From Chrysemys picta bellii (Eukaryota), in NCBI RefSeq assembly GCF_011386835.1, contig NC_088814.1:992001-1056000 (forward strand): DNA of 64,000 nucleotides, given 5' to 3'. The notes under the pieces were generated by a model. It saw only the letters and a program-made list of their open reading frames with translations, ran no database searches and was not told the DNA's origin. Of this stretch, positions 11,016-60,167 are shown in pieces (position 1 is the first letter of the stretch; every line of letters starts with the position of its first letter). A program made the translations under genes and the position numbers.

Positions 11016-11878
11016 GTTATTCTCAAAGATGGCGCACTGGTCTGCCCTGCTCTGGCATGAGTTCCTTCCTGTATGCAGCACAGAGCCATTTGCTAGACTG
11101 GGGTCCTTCCTCGGCTGTCTATTCTGCAGTTCCTGCTGGAGGAGACGCTTGATCCACAAACCCAGACACCTCCACACCAAGGAAGCGCCTCCTAAAATGC
11201 TGATGCTGCATGGAAACAGGAGAATTAACCTGTGTGAGTCCCCACTGGTCCCCTCTTCCTCACTTGGCTGCACGTTATTCTGCTGAGGCTGTAACTCTCC
11301 AGTGCTCAGTGAGGGGAGTAGGGAGAGCCAGCCATGCGCTGTCACAGCGCACTGATCAGAACCAGGGCCGGATTTAGGTGCAGGCGACCGCATGGGGTGC
11401 TGGGCTTGGGGGGGCTGTTTTTGTTGTTAGTGACAAAAGGGAAAATAGAACGTTTGAAGTAAAATGTTCCAGGTATTCCGTGTGTGGATTCATTTTTCAC
11501 TAACCTCCTAGAATGTTCTGGACTTCTGTAGAATCTCGTGGAACCTTCCAAACTTTCTGAGAACTACATTTTCCTCGAACCTCCAAGAACGTTGTCAGCC
11601 CAGCCCTCCCGGGTACTTAAGGGGCGTGGCGTCGCCAGTCAGTCAGTGAGATACAAGAATGAAGTGAAAGCCCAGCTGCGATATTGTGAACCTTGCTTTA
11701 TTGTGTAACTGTGAAAGTGTACTTGTTTTAAGTCTTGAAGAGTATAAGTAGTGCCTAATAAAGGACATATTTAATGAGACACCAGAGATATCTATTGAAT
11801 CCCTATCTATGCAGCAATATAAAAGAAATAGTTACTTCTTTTGCTATGCTAAACACGTACTGTTTGATGACTTTCTAA

Positions 11879-45491: not shown

Positions 45492-45614
45492 CCGCGGTCA
45501 CGTTGAGGAGCAGGTCCTCAGGCTCAATCACTGTCCAGTTCTGGCGCTCAGCCAGAGACTCGTTGGCTCCCGGCGTGGCGGTGCCTGCGGGATGGAGCCC
45601 GCTCCCGAGAGCCT
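45492..45614 (-). CDS. RAMP2: RAMP2 exon 2 (123 nt): (E)ALGSGLHPAGTATPGANESLAERQNWTVIEPEDLLLNVTA
   Basis: ttccccccctcctgcag acceptor, GTAAGT donor, symmetric phase 1, three N-glycosylation sequons; restores the frame between exons 1 and 3. Confidence 0.8.
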
Positions 45615-50399: not shown

Positions 50400-50960
50400 T
50401 GGGAACAGAACTCCCAGCCCCCCTACTCTAACCACTAGTCCCCACTCCCCTCCCAGAGCTGGGATAGAACCCAGGAGTACTGGCTCCCAGCCCCTCCCCA
50501 CTCTAACCACTAGACCCCACTCCCCTCCCTGATCCAGGGATAGAACCCAGGAGTCCTGGCTCCCAGCATCCCCCCACCCCAAACACTAGAACCCACTCCC
50601 CTCCCTGATCCAGGCATAGAACCCAGGAGTCCTGGCTCCCAGCCCCATCCCACTCTAACCACTAGACCCCACTCCCCTCCCCGATCCAGGGATAGAACCC
50701 AGGAGTCCTGGCTCCCAGCACCCCCCCCAACACTAGACCCCACTCCCCTCCCTGATCCAGGCATAGAACCCAGGAGTCCTGGCTCCCAGCACCCCCCCCC
50801 CAAACACTAGACCCCACTCCCCTCCCCGATCCAGGCATAGAACCCAGGAGTCCTGGCTCCCAGCACCCCCCCCCAACCACTAGACCCCACTCCCCTCCCC
50901 GATCCAGGCATAGAACCCAGGAGTCCTGGCTCCCAGCACCCCGCCCCCCAACACTAGACA
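50400..50960. repeat. About 72-76 bp minisatellite (7-8 copies) directly 3' of the RAMP paralogue
   Basis: Unit cactagaccccactcccctcc..gatccaggcatagaacccaggagtcctggctcccagc. Confidence 0.95.
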
Positions 50961-51308
50961 CTCTCTCTCCCTTTCCAGTTGATGCCCAGGACTGTGCGAG
51001 ATGAAGCCCTTTGTCTGCTGAGCACAGATGGTGCCGTGGGGAGGGGCCGATCTGGCTTTGGCTCAGCCTCCCTGGCCTTGCGGAGCGTGAGAGCAACCAG
51101 GAGAGGGGTCAGGCAGGCAGGCACGGCGGCCATGGCTAGGACGGGCCCCAGAGGTGGCTGGCTGGGCTGGGAGCTGGCAGGCACGGTGCAGTTGGTGAAA
51201 TACTCCATGTGGATCTGCAGGAAGAAGGAGTCAAGAGCAGGGCTGGGCCAGGGGCAGGAGAGCGCCTCGGCCATCAGCACGGTGCAGTTGGAGAGGTCGC
51301 TGTAGATC
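50954..51308 (-). CDS. RAMP-family paralogue (RAMP5-like candidate), last exon: (R)IYSDLSNCTVLMAEALSCPWPSPALDSFFLQIHMEYFTNCTVPASSQPSQPPLGPVLAMAAVPACLTPLLVALTLRK...GRESV*
   Basis: RAMP signature Y..L.NCT...AE.L.C.WP....D.FF..IH..YF.NC, P-P linker, TM helix; acceptor ctctccctccccag at the same phase-2 position as RAMP2 exon 4. Confidence 0.88.
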
Positions 51309-51545
51309 CTGGGGAGGGAGAGGAGGGGACGTGAGGCTGAGCCTGGCCGGGCTCAGCAGCACCCAGCGCGGTGGCCCAAACAAGCCCCAAGCCGGGCACT
51401 GACTGTGCATCCGGTAACGGCAGCGACAGGGGCACCGTTCACCCGCAGGGTCCTCGTGCGCCGCACACCGCATGCACTGAGCACCCTGCAATGCAGCCAC
51501 TGCTGGGAACTGAGCAGCCACCAGCCCGCAGCCTGTGCCGCACCC

Positions 51546-51990
51546 TGCCGATGGTGCGCTGCACACACCCCCCCCCATGCGGGACGCTGCACACAGCCGA
51601 TGGTGCGCCGCACACTTCCCCCCCCCCCCACGGGACGCCACAGGCAGCCGATGGTGCGCCGCACACACACACCCCCACGCGGGACGCTGCACACAGCCGA
51701 TGGTGCGCCGCACACACACCCCCACGCGGGATGCTGCACACAGCCGATGGTGCGCCGCACCTCCCCCCCCCACGCGGGACGCTGCACACAGCCGATGGTG
51801 CACCGCAGACTCCCCCGCACGCGGGATGCTGCACACAGCCGATGGTGCGCCGCACCCCCCACACACACGGGACGCCACAGGCAGCCGATGGTGCGCCGCA
51901 CAGCCCCCCGCACGCAGGACGCCGATGGTGCGCCGCACCCCCCCCCGCACATGGGACACCACAGGCAGCCGATGGTGCACCGCACACACC
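51546..51990. repeat. CpG-rich minisatellite (about 45-50 bp, about 10 copies) in the last intron of the RAMP paralogue
   Basis: Core cagccgatggtgcgccgcac followed by variable C/CA runs and cacgcgggacgctgcaca. Confidence 0.95.
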
Positions 51991-52295
51991 CCTGCACGCG
52001 GGAGGCCACACGCACCAGAGGCACTGCACAATGCGCCCTGCTCTCAGCATGCTGACAGCTGCGCGCAGGGAAACAGGACACACGGCAGCGCTGACTTGTT
52101 TGAAAATCCCCTTCCCCCACGGGATCGTTACCAAGCCGGGGTGCTCGGCGTCCCAGAGCCCGTCTAAGAGCAAACCCCAGCGAGGCGATGCTCTCCCCCG
52201 GCACCTGCCCGTGCCCCGGCACTACATGCACTCTGCTCCCAGCCCCAGAGCGCCTCGGAAGCGCGGATCTGTCGGGGGCGGACGGGCGTCCAGAC

Positions 52296-52437
52296 CTGCC
52301 GATCTGCTCCCACTGACACCGGCTCCACTCTGGCGTGGCCATGACTGTGGCGTGGAAGGTGGTCCAGCAGTACAGGGTGATCCACTCCAGGTAGGTGTCC
52401 CTGCAGTGGGCCGACCCGCCCTCCTCGGCAAAGGGGC
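52296..52437 (-). CDS. RAMP paralogue ectodomain exon (142 nt): (G)PFAEEGGSAHCRDTYLEWITLYCWTTFHATVMATPEWSRCQWEQIG(R)
   Basis: ctaac branch point and tctctctccctag acceptor, GTCTGG donor; C...CW..F...M......C.W..I.R matches RAMP helices 1-2; phase 1 to 2. Confidence 0.88.
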
Positions 52438-53087
52438 CTAGGGAGAGAGATCTGTCTGTTAGTCACCCCTGAGGAGCCGGGGCAGAGCTCTGGGCAGGGC
52501 GGAGGCCCCGGCACTGCCATGCCAGCCTAGCCTGCTCTACCCCGGCTCCTGGCAAGGAACATAGGCTGAGGGAATGAAGGACCCCAACCCGCAGCTCCGT
52601 CCACTAGTTCTGCCCCCTGCAGCGCAGCTCCCGTCCCCTCCCACAGCCCAGCGGAGTCCAGAGCGTGCCCCTCGCCTCGGCCTGGCAGCATCAGAACCAG
52701 CCCCTGGCTCCCCGGAGAGGCTGTTCTGAGAGCCCCAGCTAAGCCACGAGATCCCAGAGGCCTGGCCAGACACTCAGCTCCCACAGTCCGGGCTGGGCTG
52801 GGCGGGATGGATCCAGGAAAGTGCCTTTGTCCCTTGCCTCCTAGCAGGGTCGGGGCCCGGAGAACAATCAGTGTTAGCAGGCTGCTGGCACGGGGCTGTG
52901 CCAGCAGGTCGTGGGTCGGGGGCCTGCCCCCAGGCTGAGCCAGAGCCCCTTAGCTCCAGGCACCATCGGCTGCTGTCTAGCGGCAGCGGGTGTCTCTGTG
53001 GTGCACGGTGCCCCCATGCAGAGCCCCCCAGTCCTGTTGGGGGGACCGACACCTGGGCATGATGGGTGCAGGGGGGGCGTCACTCAC

Positions 53088-53114
53088 CTTCCTCCTCCAA
53101 ATACAGGTAATGAC
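53088..53114 (-). CDS. RAMP paralogue micro-exon (27 nt): (S)HYLYLEEE(G)
   Basis: Strong acceptor ccttcccctttgctcttgcag and donor GTGAGT; symmetric phase 1, no stop codon. Confidence 0.7.
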
Positions 53115-53572
53115 CTGCAAGAGCAAAGGGGAAGGATCAGAGCAGGGAGGGGGCGAGCCAGCGGGGCCTGGCCAGGGTGAATCTGTCCAGCCCCTGTCTC
53201 AGCTGTGTGGGCACCATCAGCAGCGCTGGGCACCGTCTCCCTCCACCCCAGCCCAGGCTGCTCTACCCGCTAGCCAAGACCTTGGGGAATCCTCCAGGAA
53301 GGCACCCCAGGAGCAGGGGGTCCCCACGGAGCTGGGTGCCCTCAGCACTGGGTGGGAGCTCTGGGGAAACAGGTTACTGCTGGGGGGAGACCCCCAGGTG
53401 CCTGCACTTCAGCATCCCTGACAGCGCCCACCTCAGGGGCAGGAGGGGGGACACCGGGAGGGTGGGGGGGAGGTGCTATTTGTGGCACAGGGTGAAGGAG
53501 GGAGCTCAGGATCAGGCCCCCAGAATTGTTCCCGGGGTCCCACCTTGGGAGGTGAATACAGGGGACTCTTAC

Positions 53573-53611
53573 TTTCATCCTCGAGGTCTCCGTAGGTCAG
53601 CTCCCCGCGCC
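53573..53611 (-). CDS. RAMP paralogue micro-exon (39 nt): (G)RGELTYGDLEDE(S)
   Basis: Acceptor ctctcgtctcctgctgcag and donor GTAAGA; symmetric phase 1; composition matches the neighbouring micro-exon. Confidence 0.65.
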
Positions 53612-54632
53612 CTGCAGCAGGAGACGAGAGCGGTCACAGCAGAGCTGGGCTTGGGCCCCCACAGGCCATGCCACACCCAGCCCTGTCGCAAGCGGAGGGG
53701 AGGCCCCGGCTTGGAGGGAGATGCCGAAGGGGACGGCCTGGGGCTTCCCCCTGGGCCCTGGGGAGACCCCCCGTGGGGAGCAGGGCCCATGCGATCAGGC
53801 GATGCACCCCCCGCGGCTGTAGCCGGGCTGTCTGTGGGGGCCGGGCTCCGACATCGGGGGCGCTGGCACCGACAGGCTGGTTCCTGAGCAGACAGATTGA
53901 TTTTCCGGGCGGAGGAAGGTGTGCAGCAAATATCACCTCGAACTCGGCTCCGAGGCCTGGGGTGGGGCGGAGCCGGGGCGCGGGTCTAGCAGGGCAGAGA
54001 TGGAGGCAGAGGATGGAAATGCTCAGGGACTGACCGCGCCACAGGAGGAGCTGGCGTGTCCCTCCCTGGCACACACCCTCTCATAACCCTGGGGGCCAGT
54101 CCCATCCACCCCCAAGGACTTTGGATGCACTGAGCCCAGCCCACCAGGACCCCCAGTGTCTCTCGGTGCCTTGGCCCAGGACGGGCTTTCTCAGCACTGC
54201 AAGAGAGGCCCTGGCTGGGAGCATGAAATGCTGATCGGCCCCCGGGGCCGCCGACTGGCCGCAAATCACCTCAGAGCTGCTTGGCACCCGCTCTGCTCAG
54301 GGCTCCTGGGGTGGGGAGGGGTCCCCAACAGGACAGCCTGGCAGAAAGGAACCCAAACCCACGGGAGACGCGAGAGCCAGGAGCGCCCTGCTGGGGGCGG
54401 GGGGGGGGGGAGGGAAGATGGGCTGTACCCCCTCCCAAACGGTAACAAGCCCTCAGGACAGGCGTCAGCCCGACGCAGCCGACCCCCGCCCAGCCCTTCG
54501 GGGCCCTAGGGACGGGACACAAGGAGAGCGCTCGTGCCCTCCGCTCGGACCTCCCAGCTGGGTGCTGAGGGCGTCAGAGGAGCCGGGTGGGGGCTGCGTG
54601 TGCGGGAGGCAGTGATGGGCCGAGGGACGCAC

Positions 54633-54698
54633 CCTTAAGTTGCCTCGTCTGACTCCATGGTCTGTGCACACGGCCGAGTGCTGCATGAACCCCTGGGC
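54633..54698 (-). CDS. Possible RAMP paralogue exon 2 (66 nt): (G)PGVHAALGRVHRPWSQTRQLK(G)
   Basis: Donor GTGCGT, weak acceptor ccctggcgcag; symmetric phase 1; would supply a V-H-A signal-peptidase site after the exon-1 h-region. Confidence 0.45.
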
Positions 54699-55057
54699 CT
54701 GCGCCAGGGACCCCACTGGGCACCCATCCCCCCGGAGCAGCAGGGAGGGCTGGCGACCAGCCAGGGTGCTGGGATGGGGACCGGCTCCCCAAGGAGCTGG
54801 GCTCTTCATGCTGGCAATGCCAGGCAGCTGGACCGTCCCCAGGGTGCCATCTGGGTCACAAAGCAGCAGCACCTGCCCTGGGCGAGGGAGACGAGACAAA
54901 TGCAGCAGCTGGAGCCGGGGTGGTTTGCCAGGTCGGCCTCCCTCTGCCCGGGCAGCATGTCAGGCCTGGAGCCAGGCTCGGCATCCAACCCGCTGGGATC
55001 AGACCGCAGGGGCCCAGCGGGAGCTGCCAGGCCTGGCCCCACAAGCAGGACCCTTAC

Positions 55058-55115
55058 CCCACTGCAGGAGCGGGATTAGCAGCCAGTAACAGAGGCACCG
55101 GGGCTGGACAGGCAT
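55058..55115 (-). CDS. RAMP paralogue exon 1 (58 coding nt): signal peptide MPVQPRCLCYWLLIPLLQW
   Basis: ATG at 55115, hydrophobic core, ends TGG G then GTAAGG, the same W/phase-1 ending as RAMP2 exon 1. Confidence 0.7.
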
Positions 55116-55657
55116 TCTCCCCACCTGCGGGGTCAGGGCGCAGAGTTCCCCAGGAGAGGGGCAGCAGGGCCCTTCCCCAGATATCCCCCAGCCACTTATC
55201 GCCCCATCTAGCACCTGGGCTATTGGCGGCCGCCCAGCCAATGGGAGGGAAGAGGGCAGGGAAAACATGCACTCTCCCAGGGGCTGGATCTTCCAGCCTC
55301 CAAAGTCATCAGATAAGAGGTCAAGTGAGATCTCCAGGCTGCGGGTAACTGTACAGGGAGGGAGGGAGCCGGTTCCTCTGCTTGGGATGGGGCAGGGGTC
55401 TGGGGGGTTGGCAAGGGAGCGCTCCAGGCTCCGGGACTGGGGGACAGGCTGATGGCTGACTGGTGCCAGGCATTTCTGCTCACCCGCTCCAATGTCTTCC
55501 TAGCTTTGCCTCTTCTTTGCTGGATGCATTTTGTTAGGAAAACAGCCCCAGCCCCTGGAGAGCTGGGGCACTGGCTGCGGGAAGCAGAGCAGCCACACAG
55601 AGCAAAGAAACCCACCCATGGAAAATCTCCCGGTACCAAAGCTGTCTCCCACGGGAA

Positions 55658-56692: not shown

Positions 56693-56856
56693 TCATAGAA
56701 TATCAGGGCTGGAAGGGACCTCCAGAGGTATCTAGTCCAACCCCCTGCTCAAAGCAGGACCAATCCCCACCTAAATCCCCAAATGGTCCCCTCAAGGATT
56801 GAGCTCACAACCTGGGTTTAGCAGGCCAATGCTCAAACCACTGAACTATCCCTCCC
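56693..56856 (-). mobile_element. Tortoise Pol III/SINE (tRNA-derived head, CR1-like tail)
   Basis: Minus strand gggagggatagttcagtggtttgagcattggcctgctaaaccc...cccttccagccctgatattctatga. Confidence 0.85.
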
Positions 56857-57344
56857 CTCTGGCTCAGACTGCAGTGGCAGGGTGAGGAAGGAACGGTCTG
56901 AGTGAAACATCAGGGAAAGTTTCTACCAGGGCAACTTGAGAGGGAAGTGACTCCCCGCCCCCAGGGAAGGCAGGCAGTGCTGGGGGGGGGGGGGGTGATG
57001 GCTGCTGTGTCGGGCGTTTCACCGCTGGCAGCGGGTTAAGGAAGGAGTGCAGCAGGATCTAGTGTTTGGGGCAGGAGAGGGGGAGCAGGGCTCAAGTTCC
57101 GTTCCCAGCTCTGCCAGGGAATCATGTTGTCATCTTGGGGAAACTGAGGCCTCTCCACCAGCCCCACAGCGTTGAGGTGAGGTTCGCTACTGAATGGTGG
57201 CTGAATGCGAGGAGATCCTGGGGGGAAGGTGGGGTACAGGTGCAAAGCTGTACTCTATCAAAGTGAAGGACACCAAGGAATCCACTTCCCTGGGCTCCAC
57301 AGAGCCCCTCTGCCGGTGCCTTGGCTTCCTCTCGGGTGTGGGGT

Positions 57345-57570
57345 CAGACTGGGTCAGACCAAAGGTCCGTCTAGCCCAGTATCCTGTCTGCCGACCGTGG
57401 CCAATGCCAGGCGCCCCAGAGGGAATGAACAGAACAGGGAATCATCAAGTGATCCATCCCCTGTCGCCCATTCCCAGCTTCTGGCAAACAGGGGCTAGGG
57501 ACACCATCCCTGCCCAGCCTGGCTAACAGCCATTGATGGACCCATCCTCCAGGAACTTCTCTAGCTCTTG
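57345..57570 (-). mobile_element. CR1-type LINE 3' fragment
   Basis: gactgggtcagaccaaaggtccgtctagcccagtatcctgtctgccgac...; reverse complement of 18001-18168. Confidence 0.8.
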
Positions 57571-60167
57571 TCTCCATACCAAGCCAGGCTCTTATCCGAG
57601 CCAGTTTGCTGTGATTGGAATCTCAGCCCGGCATGATTGTGACCTTCAGCCCAGCCCAGCAGCAGGGCAGGAGTGGCTCCACGAGATCAGAGGCTTTCCC
57701 AGGGAGGCCGGGACCGTGTTCCCTGCTCGGAGCCGCACACACACAGCGCGTCCTGCGCTGGTGCCACTTGCGGGGCCGAAGAGGAGGCGTGGGGCCGTTC
57801 TTGCAAAGGTTGGGTAAGCCAAGCCCCAGCCCGGCCTCCCAGGCAGCTCATGACAAAAGCCCTAGCCAGCCGGTGCAGCCAGCCTGTCCCAGCCCCACAG
57901 CCGTTCATTGCTCCCGCCGCTCTGAGCCGCCGTCCCACACTGGTCAGGGATCGCAGAGCCCCATTCTTATCTTTGAGGGTCTAACCAGCCGTGCCCCAAG
58001 CCCCCGGAGGCCCTGCAAACACAATGATCTCTCCATTTCCTTCCAGCACCCCCCCCCCACTCGCCCACTCTCTGATCACCTGCACCGAGAACCTGTCCAC
58101 ACTTGGGAATTTACGAACGGAGCTATTCTGGAATAAGGGTGTCCACCCGAGTGCTCAGTCCAGAAGAGCTGTTGTGGTACATTTCCAAGCACAACCAACC
58201 CCTGAGATACCGGGGGGAGGGGGGAGCATTGGGACTCCCTGCCCTGCACAAGAGGGTTTGTCTCAGCCCAGGGTAGCACAAAGAGCTCCTCTCACACCAT
58301 GGAATTCCCCCAAAGGCTCCACGTGCAGGTTGGATCCTGTCCAGAGGCCCCTGGCACCACCACCAAAGCCAGGGCCACCCTTGCAGACTGCTGCAGTGCC
58401 GATGATTTTGGAATACAGGGGTGGCCTCTGGCTGGGAGTCACAATCCCTTTGTTTCCCTTTCAGCAGCTGTGTTTAGCTGCTTGCTCGGGCAGTGCCCGC
58501 TGTGAGTCCGTTCTCATTTAGATCTCTGCTGCTGGCAGAATACGGAGCTAGGATCTGATTTCTATGCAGAGCTCTCTCACAGGAGGAACAGATGTGCAGA
58601 TGGGATGACAAGTCACTAGGCACCAGCCAGGCTGGGGGCCTCAGGAACAGCTCGAACCTGTAGGATTGTTTGGTTTATGGGAGGGTTCGTGTGTGTGGCT
58701 CCAACCCCTTGCCCCTGCATGCGGCAGGTCTGCAATCTTACTCCTGTCCCCACTGAAGTCAAAGGCAGAAGCTCCCATTGACTTCGGTGCAGACTGGGGA
58801 GCCGCGAGGGCAGCACAGCACGGCACCATGGCAGCATTAATAGTGATGGGCCTAGTTCTCGCTCTCCGAGGCAGCGCGAACGTGCTAAGGGGCACAAACG
58901 TTCCCCCTGCTCAGCCATATCAAACTGGTCATAAGAAAAACAGGGCTTTGAAGCCAATAAAGATAAAGCAAACTATAAACAACAGGAGATTTTTGTTGGA
59001 GATACCGGAGCACAAATAATTCCTGTTTCCCTGGGAGAGCAACATGAGCTGATGCTAATCAGCGTTTGTTCTGCTGCTAAGGCAGCCCCAGCCCACCGGG
59101 CTGGAAACCCAACCCCAAAGCAAACTGAGTGTAGTGTTTCTGCAAGGAAAGGGGGGGATTATTACTCTGAGGGGGGCCAGGTTCCTCCAGGATAAAATCG
59201 TCCCGTCTGCTTGCTCAGCGCTGCCTGCTCAGGTTTCCCAGTCGGACTCTCTTCCTGGCAGATTACAAAACTTGAGACAGTTCCTGACTTCCCTCTGCGG
59301 GATCCAGGTGAGAAGGGCAGTTCTCGCTACCCAGCAACGGAATGGCTGACACCCTGCCCTAGTGCCCGGTTCTCTCACCTCCTAATTCAGGGGGAAATTC
59401 ACCCCTGAGCCGTGCCAGAACAAGGCCTTGGTACCCCCCGCCCCTCATCCCTTAAGTCCTGCTGCAGCCCTATGGGTTAGGTTTGGGGAAAGCTTAGCAC
59501 GTGTCAGGTGCATGTCGAGTGCTGAACATGGGCCACTGGGCTCTTGAAATACACAGAGCAGCGCAGCACAGGCCGGGAGTGATACTCAGTGCAAGATCCA
59601 GCTCCTGCCGGGCAGAGGCTGAAGTTAACAAGGAGCAGGATGAGGAGTATGGAGAGGAGGCGTCGGCCTATTCCCAATAGCTGCGCGGTGACTCTGGCCT
59701 GACATGAGAAGGGTGGGGGTGGGGGTGAGCGGATTTGATGTGCGATTCCTTTTCCTGGCGTAATTACTGTGTGTGTCGGATGCTCCCGATACCCCATCCC
59801 CAGGCACGAGGGCAACGTGCAGTATAGAAGCTTAGGAACAAAAACCTATCAGGAAAAGAATCCCTGACACAGCAGCCCGGCCAACCCTTCCGCTCCTCCC
59901 ACACAAGCCAAAGGAAACAGATGGGCCCTTGACCATGCCCGAAAGATCAACACACTGGGCTCTGTCAGCCCCCTGGAGGAAGTGCACTCCAGAGCCAAGC
60001 CTGGCAACCACCAGACCAACCTGCATCCAGCCCCCAGATGCTGGATTCTGGGGGCTGTTCGCTCCTGGCTGATCCAGCTCCTAGTCAGAGGAGTCTCTCA
60101 GCTAGCCAGCACACAAGCCACATCGGGCTTTGTTGAGGAAAGGCAGCCCCTGGAAGCCAAGAGGAAG

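What the first reader, a model, noticed from the sequence alone, without database searches (positions are those of the whole stretch)
53088..53611. Acidic, tyrosine-rich N-terminal arm built from symmetric micro-exons (27 and 39 nt)
Seen: two phase-1/phase-1 micro-exons with strong splice sites encode RGELTYGDLEDESHYLYLEEEG, continuing as PFAEEGG in the next exon: three Tyr among nine Asp/Glu. Established: Tyr residues in acidic context on secreted or extracellular N-termini are tyrosylprotein sulfotransferase substrates and mediate peptide or chemokine binding in several GPCRs; mammalian RAMPs lack such a segment. Inference: a modular, in-frame skippable and possibly sulfated ligand-binding arm that could tune peptide selectivity by alternative splicing. 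The similar Y...E/D-E endings suggest exon duplication.
Basis: partly seen in the sequence, partly recalled or inferred. Interest (0 to 1): 0.7.

Follow-up and report, generated by a model that had tools for sequence, protein, structure and literature searches.

The report
Conserved acidic tyrosine arm of RAMP
Two tiny exons (39 and 27 bases) of a turtle RAMP gene with no mammalian counterpart found here are spliced into its mRNA and encode a flexible, very acidic, tyrosine-rich tip conserved from amphibians to birds; a sulfated ligand-catching arm is now testable but not shown.

Summary
On the minus strand, exons of 39 nt (53611-53573) and 27 nt (53114-53088) lie between the signal-peptide exon and the first RAMP-domain exon. 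Both are phase 1-1 with AG/GT sites. One RNA-like contig (run X3) joins exon 1, A, B, exon 4 and the last exon exactly at these borders.

The gene is a RAMP-family paralogue lying head-to-tail upstream of RAMP2. Orthologues in turtles, alligator, birds, lizards and a caecilian carry the same arm. Exon sizes and phases are identical in alligator, anole and pigeon.

Sturgeon and bowfin have only one micro-exon (39 and 33 nt). So A is ancient, and B was seen only in tetrapods.

AlphaFold2 predicts the arm as low-confidence coil before helix 1. Each of the three Tyr has at least 4 Asp/Glu within five residues, at most one Lys/Arg, and no nearby Cys or N-glycan site. This fits the sulfation rules, but sulfation and ligand contact remain untested.

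Skipping was not seen in the turtle; one anole RefSeq model skips B. An A-to-B exon duplication has no statistical support.

Verdict: real, conserved and undescribed in the papers searched. Function is inferred.

The parts
55058..55115 (-). Exon 1, coding part: ATG at 55115, hydrophobic signal peptide (MPVQPRCLCYWLLIPLLQW + 1 base), donor in phase 1
   Evidence: Sequence. X3 contig record 30 covers 55057-55138, and the joint 53610/55057 links it to exon A. Identical to P0021.
53573..53611 (-). Micro-exon A, 39 nt, phase 1-1; encodes (G)RGELTYGDLEDE(S). It probably holds the signal-peptidase site and the mature N-terminus.
   Evidence: RNA joints. Same size and phase in alligator, anole, pigeon and sturgeon. 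Turtle and alligator differ at 5 synonymous and 0 non-synonymous codons in the ELTYGDLEDE core.
53088..53114 (-). Micro-exon B, 27 nt, phase 1-1; encodes (S)HYLYLEEE(G). Seen only in tetrapods.
   Evidence: RNA joints 52436/53087 and 53112/53571. 27 nt in alligator, anole and pigeon. Absent from sturgeon and bowfin gene structures.
52296..52437 (-). Exon 4, 142 nt: end of the arm (PFAEEGGSAH), then the first Cys and helix 1 of the RAMP ectodomain
   Evidence: Joints. Alignment A1.
50954..51308 (-). Last coding exon with stop: rest of the RAMP domain, the transmembrane helix and a long cytoplasmic tail of about 40 residues
   Evidence: Pfam RAMP PF04901, E 3.8e-20. Joint 51307/52295.
53583..53883 (-). 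Minor alternative acceptor at 53883, joined to exon 1 and read through exon A's acceptor. It runs into a stop after 28 further codons, so it is non-productive.
   Evidence: Joint 53882/55057 at depth 3.1, against 44-88 for the main form. Translation.
45492..45614 (-). Exon 2 of the neighbouring RAMP2 gene, 123 nt, phase 1-1. It occupies the same position in the gene as the micro-exons. It is rich in N-glycosylation sites and has no Tyr cluster.
   Evidence: Sequence. RAMP2 exons 3 and 4 located by tblastn. The translation matches the pre-domain segment of turtle RAMP2 representatives P0122 and P0092.

Best explanation
The two micro-exons are genuine coding exons. They were included in the only spliced transcript seen, and they are conserved across tetrapods. 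The gene is a fourth tetrapod RAMP that sits between EZH1 and RAMP2 and looks RAMP5-like.

Together with the first residues of exon 4, the exons encode an arm of about 30 residues. The arm is flexible and has a net charge near -9. It begins right after the signal-peptide cleavage site and ends at helix 1 of the three-helix RAMP ectodomain.

Shown: splicing, topology class, conservation, predicted disorder, and the Tyr contexts.

Inferred: the protein passes the trans-Golgi as a type I membrane protein, so the three Tyr are likely substrates of tyrosylprotein sulfotransferase. An anionic, aromatic arm anchored there would act as an electrostatic tether for the cationic CGRP/adrenomedullin-family peptides, or for the partner receptor's ectodomain. 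That would change ligand capture or selectivity.

Exon A is ancient in bony vertebrates. Exon B, which carries the YxY pair, was added on the tetrapod stem.
For: Splicing:
- A 556-nt contig carries all four GT-AG joints.

Family:
- Pfam RAMP domain.
- Six invariant Cys.
- Best solved relatives are human RAMP1, RAMP2 and RAMP3, all of which start after the arm.
- AlphaFold2 of the hawksbill orthologue gives three helices plus a transmembrane helix at pLDDT 82-97, and the arm (residues 21-49) as coil at pLDDT 46-53.

Conservation:
- The arm is present in 4 turtles, alligator, more than 10 birds, 3 squamates and a caecilian.
- Exon sizes of 39 and 27 nt and phase 1-1 are kept in alligator, anole and pigeon.
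- Only synonymous differences occur in ELTYGDLEDE between turtle and alligator.
- Three Tyr are present in nearly every orthologue.

Sulfation context:
- Each Tyr has at least 4 D/E within +-5, at most 1 K/R, and no Cys or N-X-S/T within +-7.

Orthology and age:
- The tandem order arm-RAMP then RAMP2 is found in the window, alligator and sturgeon. EZH1 lies next door in anole, bowfin and pigeon.
- There is one 39-nt micro-exon in sturgeon and one of 33 nt in bowfin.
Against: - No direct evidence exists for sulfation, ligand contact or any effect on pharmacology.
- No sulfation predictor was available, so only rule counting was done.
- Fish orthologues keep the acidic motif mostly with Phe, which cannot be sulfated. 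The conserved requirement may therefore be 'acidic plus aromatic' rather than sulfotyrosine.
- The signal-peptide cleavage site is inferred from the -3/-1 rule only.
- The spliced RNA comes from one run.
- The partner receptor is unknown.
Confidence: 0.5

Rival explanations
1. The arm is a regulated cassette. Tissue-specific skipping of A and/or B makes receptors with different peptide selectivity.
For: - Both exons are multiples of 3 and phase 1-1, so all skip forms stay in frame.
- Anole RefSeq isoform X2 lacks exactly the 9 residues of exon B.
- Sardine and arowana models differ by 13- and 12-residue in-frame N-terminal blocks.
Against: - In the turtle, only the full inclusion form and a low-depth non-productive alternative acceptor were seen. 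Contigs do drop rare forms, so this is weak evidence.
- The anole skip model also has a non-canonical 5' end that reads through the intron's pyrimidine tract and lacks a signal peptide, so it may rest on unprocessed RNA.
- Strong conservation of both exons argues for constitutive use.
Confidence: 0.15
2. The arm is a structural or trafficking element with no ligand role. As an acidic, disordered spacer it would set the signal-peptidase site, keep the ectodomain soluble, or assist ER exit and pairing with the receptor.
For: - Exon A spans the predicted cleavage site (G-x-G/S just before ELTY in turtle, birds and alligator).
- The arm is predicted to be disordered.
- RAMP2 has an unrelated, glycosylated extension encoded at the same position, so 'some extension' may be what matters.
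Against: - Residue-level conservation, including three Tyr and the motif YGDLEDE..HYLYL[DE]E[DE] over roughly 250-350 My, is more than a spacer needs.
- RAMP1 and RAMP3 function without any extension.
Confidence: 0.2
3. The arm is a docking site for a cationic partner other than the CGRP-family peptide, or a tethered pseudo-ligand. In the first case it would resemble hirudin-like or PSGL-1-like sulfotyrosine motifs that bind basic exosites. In the second, its aromatic residues would occupy the pocket that normally takes the C-terminal Tyr/Phe-amide of the peptide.
For: - Acidic-aromatic repeats (Y-L-E-E-E-G-P-F-A-E-E) resemble such motifs. This rests on my memory of hirudin, PAR1 and PSGL-1 and was not tested.
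- An aromatic residue is kept even where Tyr is replaced by Phe in fish.
Against: No partner is known, no similarity search supports it, and the idea is purely by analogy.
Confidence: 0.1
4. The micro-exons are chance splice-site matches in an intron and are not part of the mRNA.
For: None after testing. Short ORF fragments with AG/GT flanks are common in GC-rich introns.
Against: - RNA contig joints fall at exactly these borders.
- An identical public protein model exists.
- Size, phase and peptide are conserved in four other species' genomes.
Confidence: 0.01

Closest known systems
Mammalian RAMP1, RAMP2 and RAMP3 (Pfam PF04901; e.g. PDB 6e3y, 6uun, 6uus)
   Same: - Signal peptide, three-helix ectodomain with conserved Cys, a single transmembrane helix and a short motif-bearing tail.
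- The profile matches RAMP1 at 85 bits, RAMP2 at 70 and RAMP3 at 55.
- The six-Cys pattern is like RAMP1 and RAMP3.
- The intron before the first domain exon is in phase 1, as in the neighbouring RAMP2.
   Different: - It forms a separate clade (SH-aLRT 98) in which I found no mammalian member.
- It carries the acidic Tyr-rich arm, encoded by two micro-exons.
- RAMP1 and RAMP3 have no extension. RAMP2 has a non-homologous glycosylated one from a single 123-nt exon.
- Turtles and birds have a long cytoplasmic tail.
Fish RAMP5, in the RAMP2/5 group of Takifugu (Nag et al. 2006, as cited in PMC2614204 and PMC6283891)
   Same: - The literature describes RAMP5 as an early duplicate of RAMP2.
- The gene here is a tandem neighbour of RAMP2.
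- Its fish relatives (sturgeon, bowfin, gar and many teleosts) share the synteny and the acidic motif before the first Cys.
   Different: - PMC2614204 states that RAMP5 is fish-only and was lost before tetrapods. Here the lineage is present in amphibian and sauropsids.
- I could not compare with the Takifugu RAMP5 sequence itself.
- The fish clade joins the tetrapod clade only weakly in my tree (support 25).
- Fish have one micro-exon and mostly Phe instead of Tyr.
Sulfotyrosine-bearing N-termini of GPCRs and adhesion receptors (CCR5, CXCR4, C5aR, PSGL-1; from established knowledge, not tested here)
   Same: - An extracellular, flexible, strongly acidic segment with clustered Tyr.
- Few basic residues and no nearby glycan or disulfide.
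   Different: - The arm is on an accessory subunit, not on the receptor itself.
- Sulfation has not been demonstrated.
- The ligands would be class B peptide hormones rather than chemokines or selectins.

Membership tests
RAMP family (PF04901) | Significant match to the RAMP domain profile | tested here: met
   Last exon: E 3.8e-20, 72 bits against a cut-off of 27. PDB profile search: RAMP1 at E 4e-23.
RAMP family (PF04901) | Conserved ectodomain cysteines (4 in all RAMPs, 6 in RAMP1 and RAMP3) | tested here: met
   Six invariant Cys in alignment A1. All six are present in the window's exons 4 and 5.
RAMP family (PF04901) | Type I topology: signal peptide, three-helix ectodomain, one transmembrane helix | tested here: met
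   AlphaFold2 of orthologue P0003 gives helices 50-76, 85-105 and 113-127 and a transmembrane helix at 143-171, with pLDDT above 90 in the bundle. Hydrophobic N-terminus. The signal peptide was not run through a predictor.
RAMP family (PF04901) | Forms heterodimers with CLR/CTR and changes their pharmacology | not testable with these tools
   Needs co-expression assays.
Fish RAMP5 (RAMP2/5 group) | Groups with RAMP5 and RAMP2 in a phylogeny that includes the Takifugu reference | tested here: inconclusive
   The tetrapod clade (98) and the fish clade (91) join with support of only 25. No named RAMP5 reference was available.
Fish RAMP5 (RAMP2/5 group) | Origin by duplication of RAMP2, shown by shared locus | tested here: met
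   Tandem with RAMP2 in the window, alligator and sturgeon. EZH1 is adjacent in anole, bowfin and pigeon, and VPS25 lies downstream in pigeon.
Tyrosine-sulfated extracellular arm (TPST substrate) | Tyr with several acidic and few basic neighbours, and no nearby Cys or N-glycan (classical consensus features) | tested here: met
   Each of the 3 Tyr has 4-5 D/E within +-5, 0-1 K/R, and none of the excluding features. The same holds in 13 orthologues.
Tyrosine-sulfated extracellular arm (TPST substrate) | Exposed, flexible segment in the lumen of the secretory pathway | tested here: met
   Coil with pLDDT 46-53, N-terminal to the ectodomain. Luminal location is inferred from the RAMP topology.
Tyrosine-sulfated extracellular arm (TPST substrate) | Sulfate actually present on Tyr | not testable with these tools
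   Needs mass spectrometry or 35S labelling.
Alternatively spliced cassette micro-exon | Symmetric phase and length divisible by 3 | tested here: met
   39 and 27 nt, both phase 1-1.
Alternatively spliced cassette micro-exon | Both inclusion and skipping forms observed in RNA | tested here: not met
   Only inclusion was seen in the turtle contigs. Contigs can hide rare forms. The anole model X2 skips B but its RNA support was not checked.

The most novel reading that the evidence does not exclude
The arm is a sulfotyrosine co-receptor element. It would give the CLR/CTR complex of non-mammalian tetrapods a ligand preference that no mammalian RAMP provides, for example for AM2- or AM5-type peptides, whose preferred receptor is still unclear. 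Exon B would be a tetrapod invention that added the YxY pair. Loss of the whole gene in mammals would have removed that receptor phenotype.
Probability: 0.15. Interest if true: 0.8.

Novelty: new variant of a known kind. Interest (0 to 1): 0.55.

Why it matters
RAMPs decide which peptide a class B GPCR recognises, and the CGRP receptor (CLR-RAMP1) is a major drug target. The textbook set is three RAMPs, none with a ligand-facing N-terminal arm of this kind.

A fourth tetrapod RAMP would be a natural experiment. Its N-terminus is a deeply conserved, acidic arm that is probably sulfated, and it could show how an accessory subunit reaches the ligand. The finding also corrects the published view that the RAMP2-derived paralogue was lost before tetrapods (PMC2614204). 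It yields simple tests: Tyr-to-Phe changes, arm deletion, and TPST knockout.

The public models of the gene in the painted turtle that I saw are broken: one runs into intron 4 and one is partial. The RNA contig gives the correct model.

Tried and rejected
1. Chance splice sites: rejected by the RNA joints.

2. Exon B as a copy of exon A.
- The local DNA score is not above mononucleotide shuffles (p 0.11) or codon shuffles (p 0.32).
- With 60-nt flanks p is 0.03, but that alignment is mostly pyrimidine tracts.
- B against the 5' end of exon 4 gives p 0.04 uncorrected, too weak to claim.

3. Skipping joints (55058 to 53114, 53573 to 52437, 55058 to 52437): none in four runs.

4. Literature.
- I found no paper linking RAMPs with tyrosine sulfation. 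The one hit mentions sulfation of GPCRs only.
- I found no paper on a tetrapod RAMP5 or on the zebrafish symbol of the fish clade.

5. Naming the fish clade as RAMP5: source names are inconsistent (RAMP1, RAMP2, RAMP3-like or uncharacterized), so the name stays a lead.

6. DNA of the caecilian locus was not obtainable.

7. The window's spliced protein was not sent joined to any search tool.
- Searches used single exons by reference or public orthologues (P0003, alignments A1 and A2).
- The joined reading was made only inside a local script, to check frames.

8. The match of the arm to residues 13-25 of PDB chain 6e3y_E is the construct's FLAG tag, not a RAMP1 feature.

Full report
**What is in the sequence**

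The feature lies on the minus strand. The gene model is:
- Exon 1: ATG at 55115 to 55058. It encodes a hydrophobic signal peptide and has a phase 1 donor.
- Micro-exon A: 53611-53573, 39 nt.
- Micro-exon B: 53114-53088, 27 nt.
- Exon 4: 52437-52296.
- Last exon: 51308-50957, then a stop.

The total is 206 codons.

Both micro-exons have a long pyrimidine tract with CAG at the acceptor, and GTAAG or GTGAG at the donor. One count is off: the 22-mer has eight acidic residues, not nine.

**Is it spliced?**

Yes. I laid four runs on 50900-55200. In run X3 a single 556-nt contig at depth 44 contains exon A, exon B, exon 4 and the last exon. A further joint links exon A to exon 1.

All four joints fall on the predicted borders and skip GT..AG intervals. 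The runs are only guessed to be RNA, but a contig without four canonical introns can only come from spliced RNA.

The other two runs of the same organism held low-depth unspliced pieces and no joints. So support comes from one run of one study.

No skipping joint was seen. One minor joint (depth 3) uses an acceptor at 53883 and reads on through exon A's acceptor. It meets a stop after 28 codons and is probably noise or a decay target.

**What gene is it?**

- The last exon matches Pfam RAMP at E 3.8e-20.
- RAMP2 proper lies downstream on the same strand. Its exons 3 and 4 are at about 43678-43580 and 41712-41473, and its exon 2 is at 45614-45492.
I confirmed the tandem arrangement.

I did not send the joined protein of the window to any search. 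I searched exons by reference and then used public orthologues.

The word search found full-length orthologues that carry the arm:
- Hawksbill turtle, softshell turtle, a side-necked turtle and big-headed turtle.
- Chinese alligator.
- Many birds.
- The caecilian Rhinatrema.

The profile search of 1.84 billion representatives added gecko, bearded dragon, anole and emu.

A painted-turtle RefSeq model (P0021) equals my exon1-A-B-exon4 reading over 89 residues and then runs into intron 4. A UniProt entry of the same species equals the last exon. The window is therefore from Chrysemys picta or a very close relative, and the two public models of the gene I saw for that species are broken.

**Conservation of the arm**

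| Lineage | Arm sequence |
|---|---|
| Turtles and alligator | ELTYGDLEDESHY[LI]YL[ED]E[ED] |
| Birds | D.[DE]YGDLEDEGHYLYLDEDG |
| Squamates | VTYSDLEDE.SYLYPDEEELFEEED |
| Caecilian | VTYGYIEDEEH.., followed by a diverged second part |

- Three Tyr are present in almost every orthologue.
- Exon sizes (39 and 27 nt), phases and AG/GT sites are the same in alligator, anole and pigeon genomic DNA.
- In the ten core codons of exon A, turtle and alligator differ at five codons, all synonymously.

**Age and origin**

In a tree of 96 family representatives, the tetrapod arm-bearing proteins form one clade with SH-aLRT 98. I found no mammal in it. A clade of 26 fish representatives joins it, but only weakly, with support 25.

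Synteny ties the two clades together:
- EZH1 lies upstream in anole, bowfin and pigeon.
- RAMP2 lies downstream in the window, alligator and sturgeon.
- VPS25 lies further downstream in pigeon.

Sturgeon has a single micro-exon of 39 nt whose peptide shares 6 of 12 residues with turtle exon A. Bowfin has one of 33 nt. In both, the next exon starts with an acidic Phe motif (EFQNQE, EFEYQE) that corresponds to PFAEEG in the turtle.

So exon A is old in bony vertebrates, and exon B was seen only in tetrapods. Many teleosts keep ..ITEDDESFQDQE.. before the first Cys.

After more than 350 My, no signal would be expected either way.

RAMP2's exon 2 (123 nt, phase 1-1) sits at the same place in its gene but encodes an unrelated, glycosylated segment.

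**Structure**

AlphaFold2 was run on the hawksbill orthologue with a 42-row alignment:
- The three-helix bundle and the transmembrane helix are predicted with high confidence.
- Residues 21-49, the arm, are coil with pLDDT 46-53.

A profile search of the PDB finds human RAMP1, then RAMP2, then RAMP3. All of them start after the arm. The only overlap with the arm is a FLAG tag in one construct. So solved mammalian RAMPs lack this segment.

**Sulfation**

I could only count the classical features. Each Tyr has four or five Asp/Glu within five residues and at most one Lys/Arg. None has a Cys or an N-glycosylation motif within seven residues. The segment is predicted to be flexible.

As a type I membrane protein, the N-terminus faces the Golgi lumen, where the sulfotransferases act. 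That is inference.

Against sulfation as the conserved essence, fish orthologues mostly have Phe at the aromatic site.

I found no paper that links RAMPs with tyrosine sulfation.

**Alternative splicing**

All skip forms stay in frame. RefSeq isoform models differ by exact small blocks in three species:
- Anole X2 lacks the nine residues of exon B.
- Sardine X1 and X2 differ by 13 residues.
- Arowana X1 and X2 differ by a duplicated 12-residue unit.

These are models whose RNA support I did not check. The anole skip form also has an odd 5' end. In the turtle I saw only inclusion.

**Literature**

PMC2614204 (2008) places RAMP5 as an early RAMP2 duplicate found only in fishes and lost before tetrapods. 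PMC6283891 groups pufferfish RAMPs as 1/4, 2/5 and 3, with CLR1-RAMP5 forming an AM receptor.

The present lineage fits a RAMP5-like identity by locus. I could not test it against the reference sequence.

**Verdict**

- The structural part of the interpretation (a modular, extracellular, acidic Tyr-rich arm absent from mammalian RAMPs) is supported.
- Sulfation is plausible.
- Regulated skipping and exon duplication are not supported by what I could test.
- The arm is a new variant within a known family and gives a clear experimental handle.

Noticed in passing
window 50411-50959: Directly after the stop codon lies a tandem array of about 7.4 copies of a 76-nt unit (90% matches). Read depth there is thousands-fold above the gene (48,577 against about 4 in X1), so the unit is a very abundant dispersed repeat of this genome.
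   Followed up: partly
window 51536-52011: Intron 4 of the gene holds a GC-rich minisatellite of about 10 copies of a 47-nt unit (77% matches).
   Followed up: partly
window 50957-51100: The cytoplasmic tail is about 40 residues in turtles, and is also long and Cys/Pro-rich in birds. Mammalian RAMPs have about 10 residues. The alligator model ends earlier.
   Followed up: no
window 52296 / 51308 (intron 4 borders): The painted-turtle RefSeq model LOC122172543 (P0021) reads into intron 4 instead of splicing to the last exon, and the UniProt entry P0005 holds only the last exon. The RNA contig gives the correct join.
   Followed up: yes
window 55236-55301 and 56700-59170: Blocks of non-coding DNA upstream of the ATG are conserved with the alligator locus. 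One is a promoter-proximal block with a CCAAT-like ccattgg. No EZH1 exon lies within the window.
   Followed up: partly
window 52339-52391: In run X1, a 477-nt contig matches only 53 nt inside exon 4 and then runs on into unlike sequence. It may be a chimeric contig, another splice form or a related copy.
   Followed up: no
L005 (pigeon) about 11030-11056; bird proteins P0032, P0044, P0010: Several bird models insert 7-8 residues (SGWGSAG-like) between exon B and exon 4. This fits an alternative acceptor about 21 nt upstream of exon 4.
   Followed up: no
P0177 versus P0121 (Scleropages): The arowana orthologue has a tandemly duplicated 12-residue N-terminal unit (..LHTNFSMDNE twice) that is present in isoform X1 and absent in X2. 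This looks like a recent micro-exon duplication in the same arm.
   Followed up: partly
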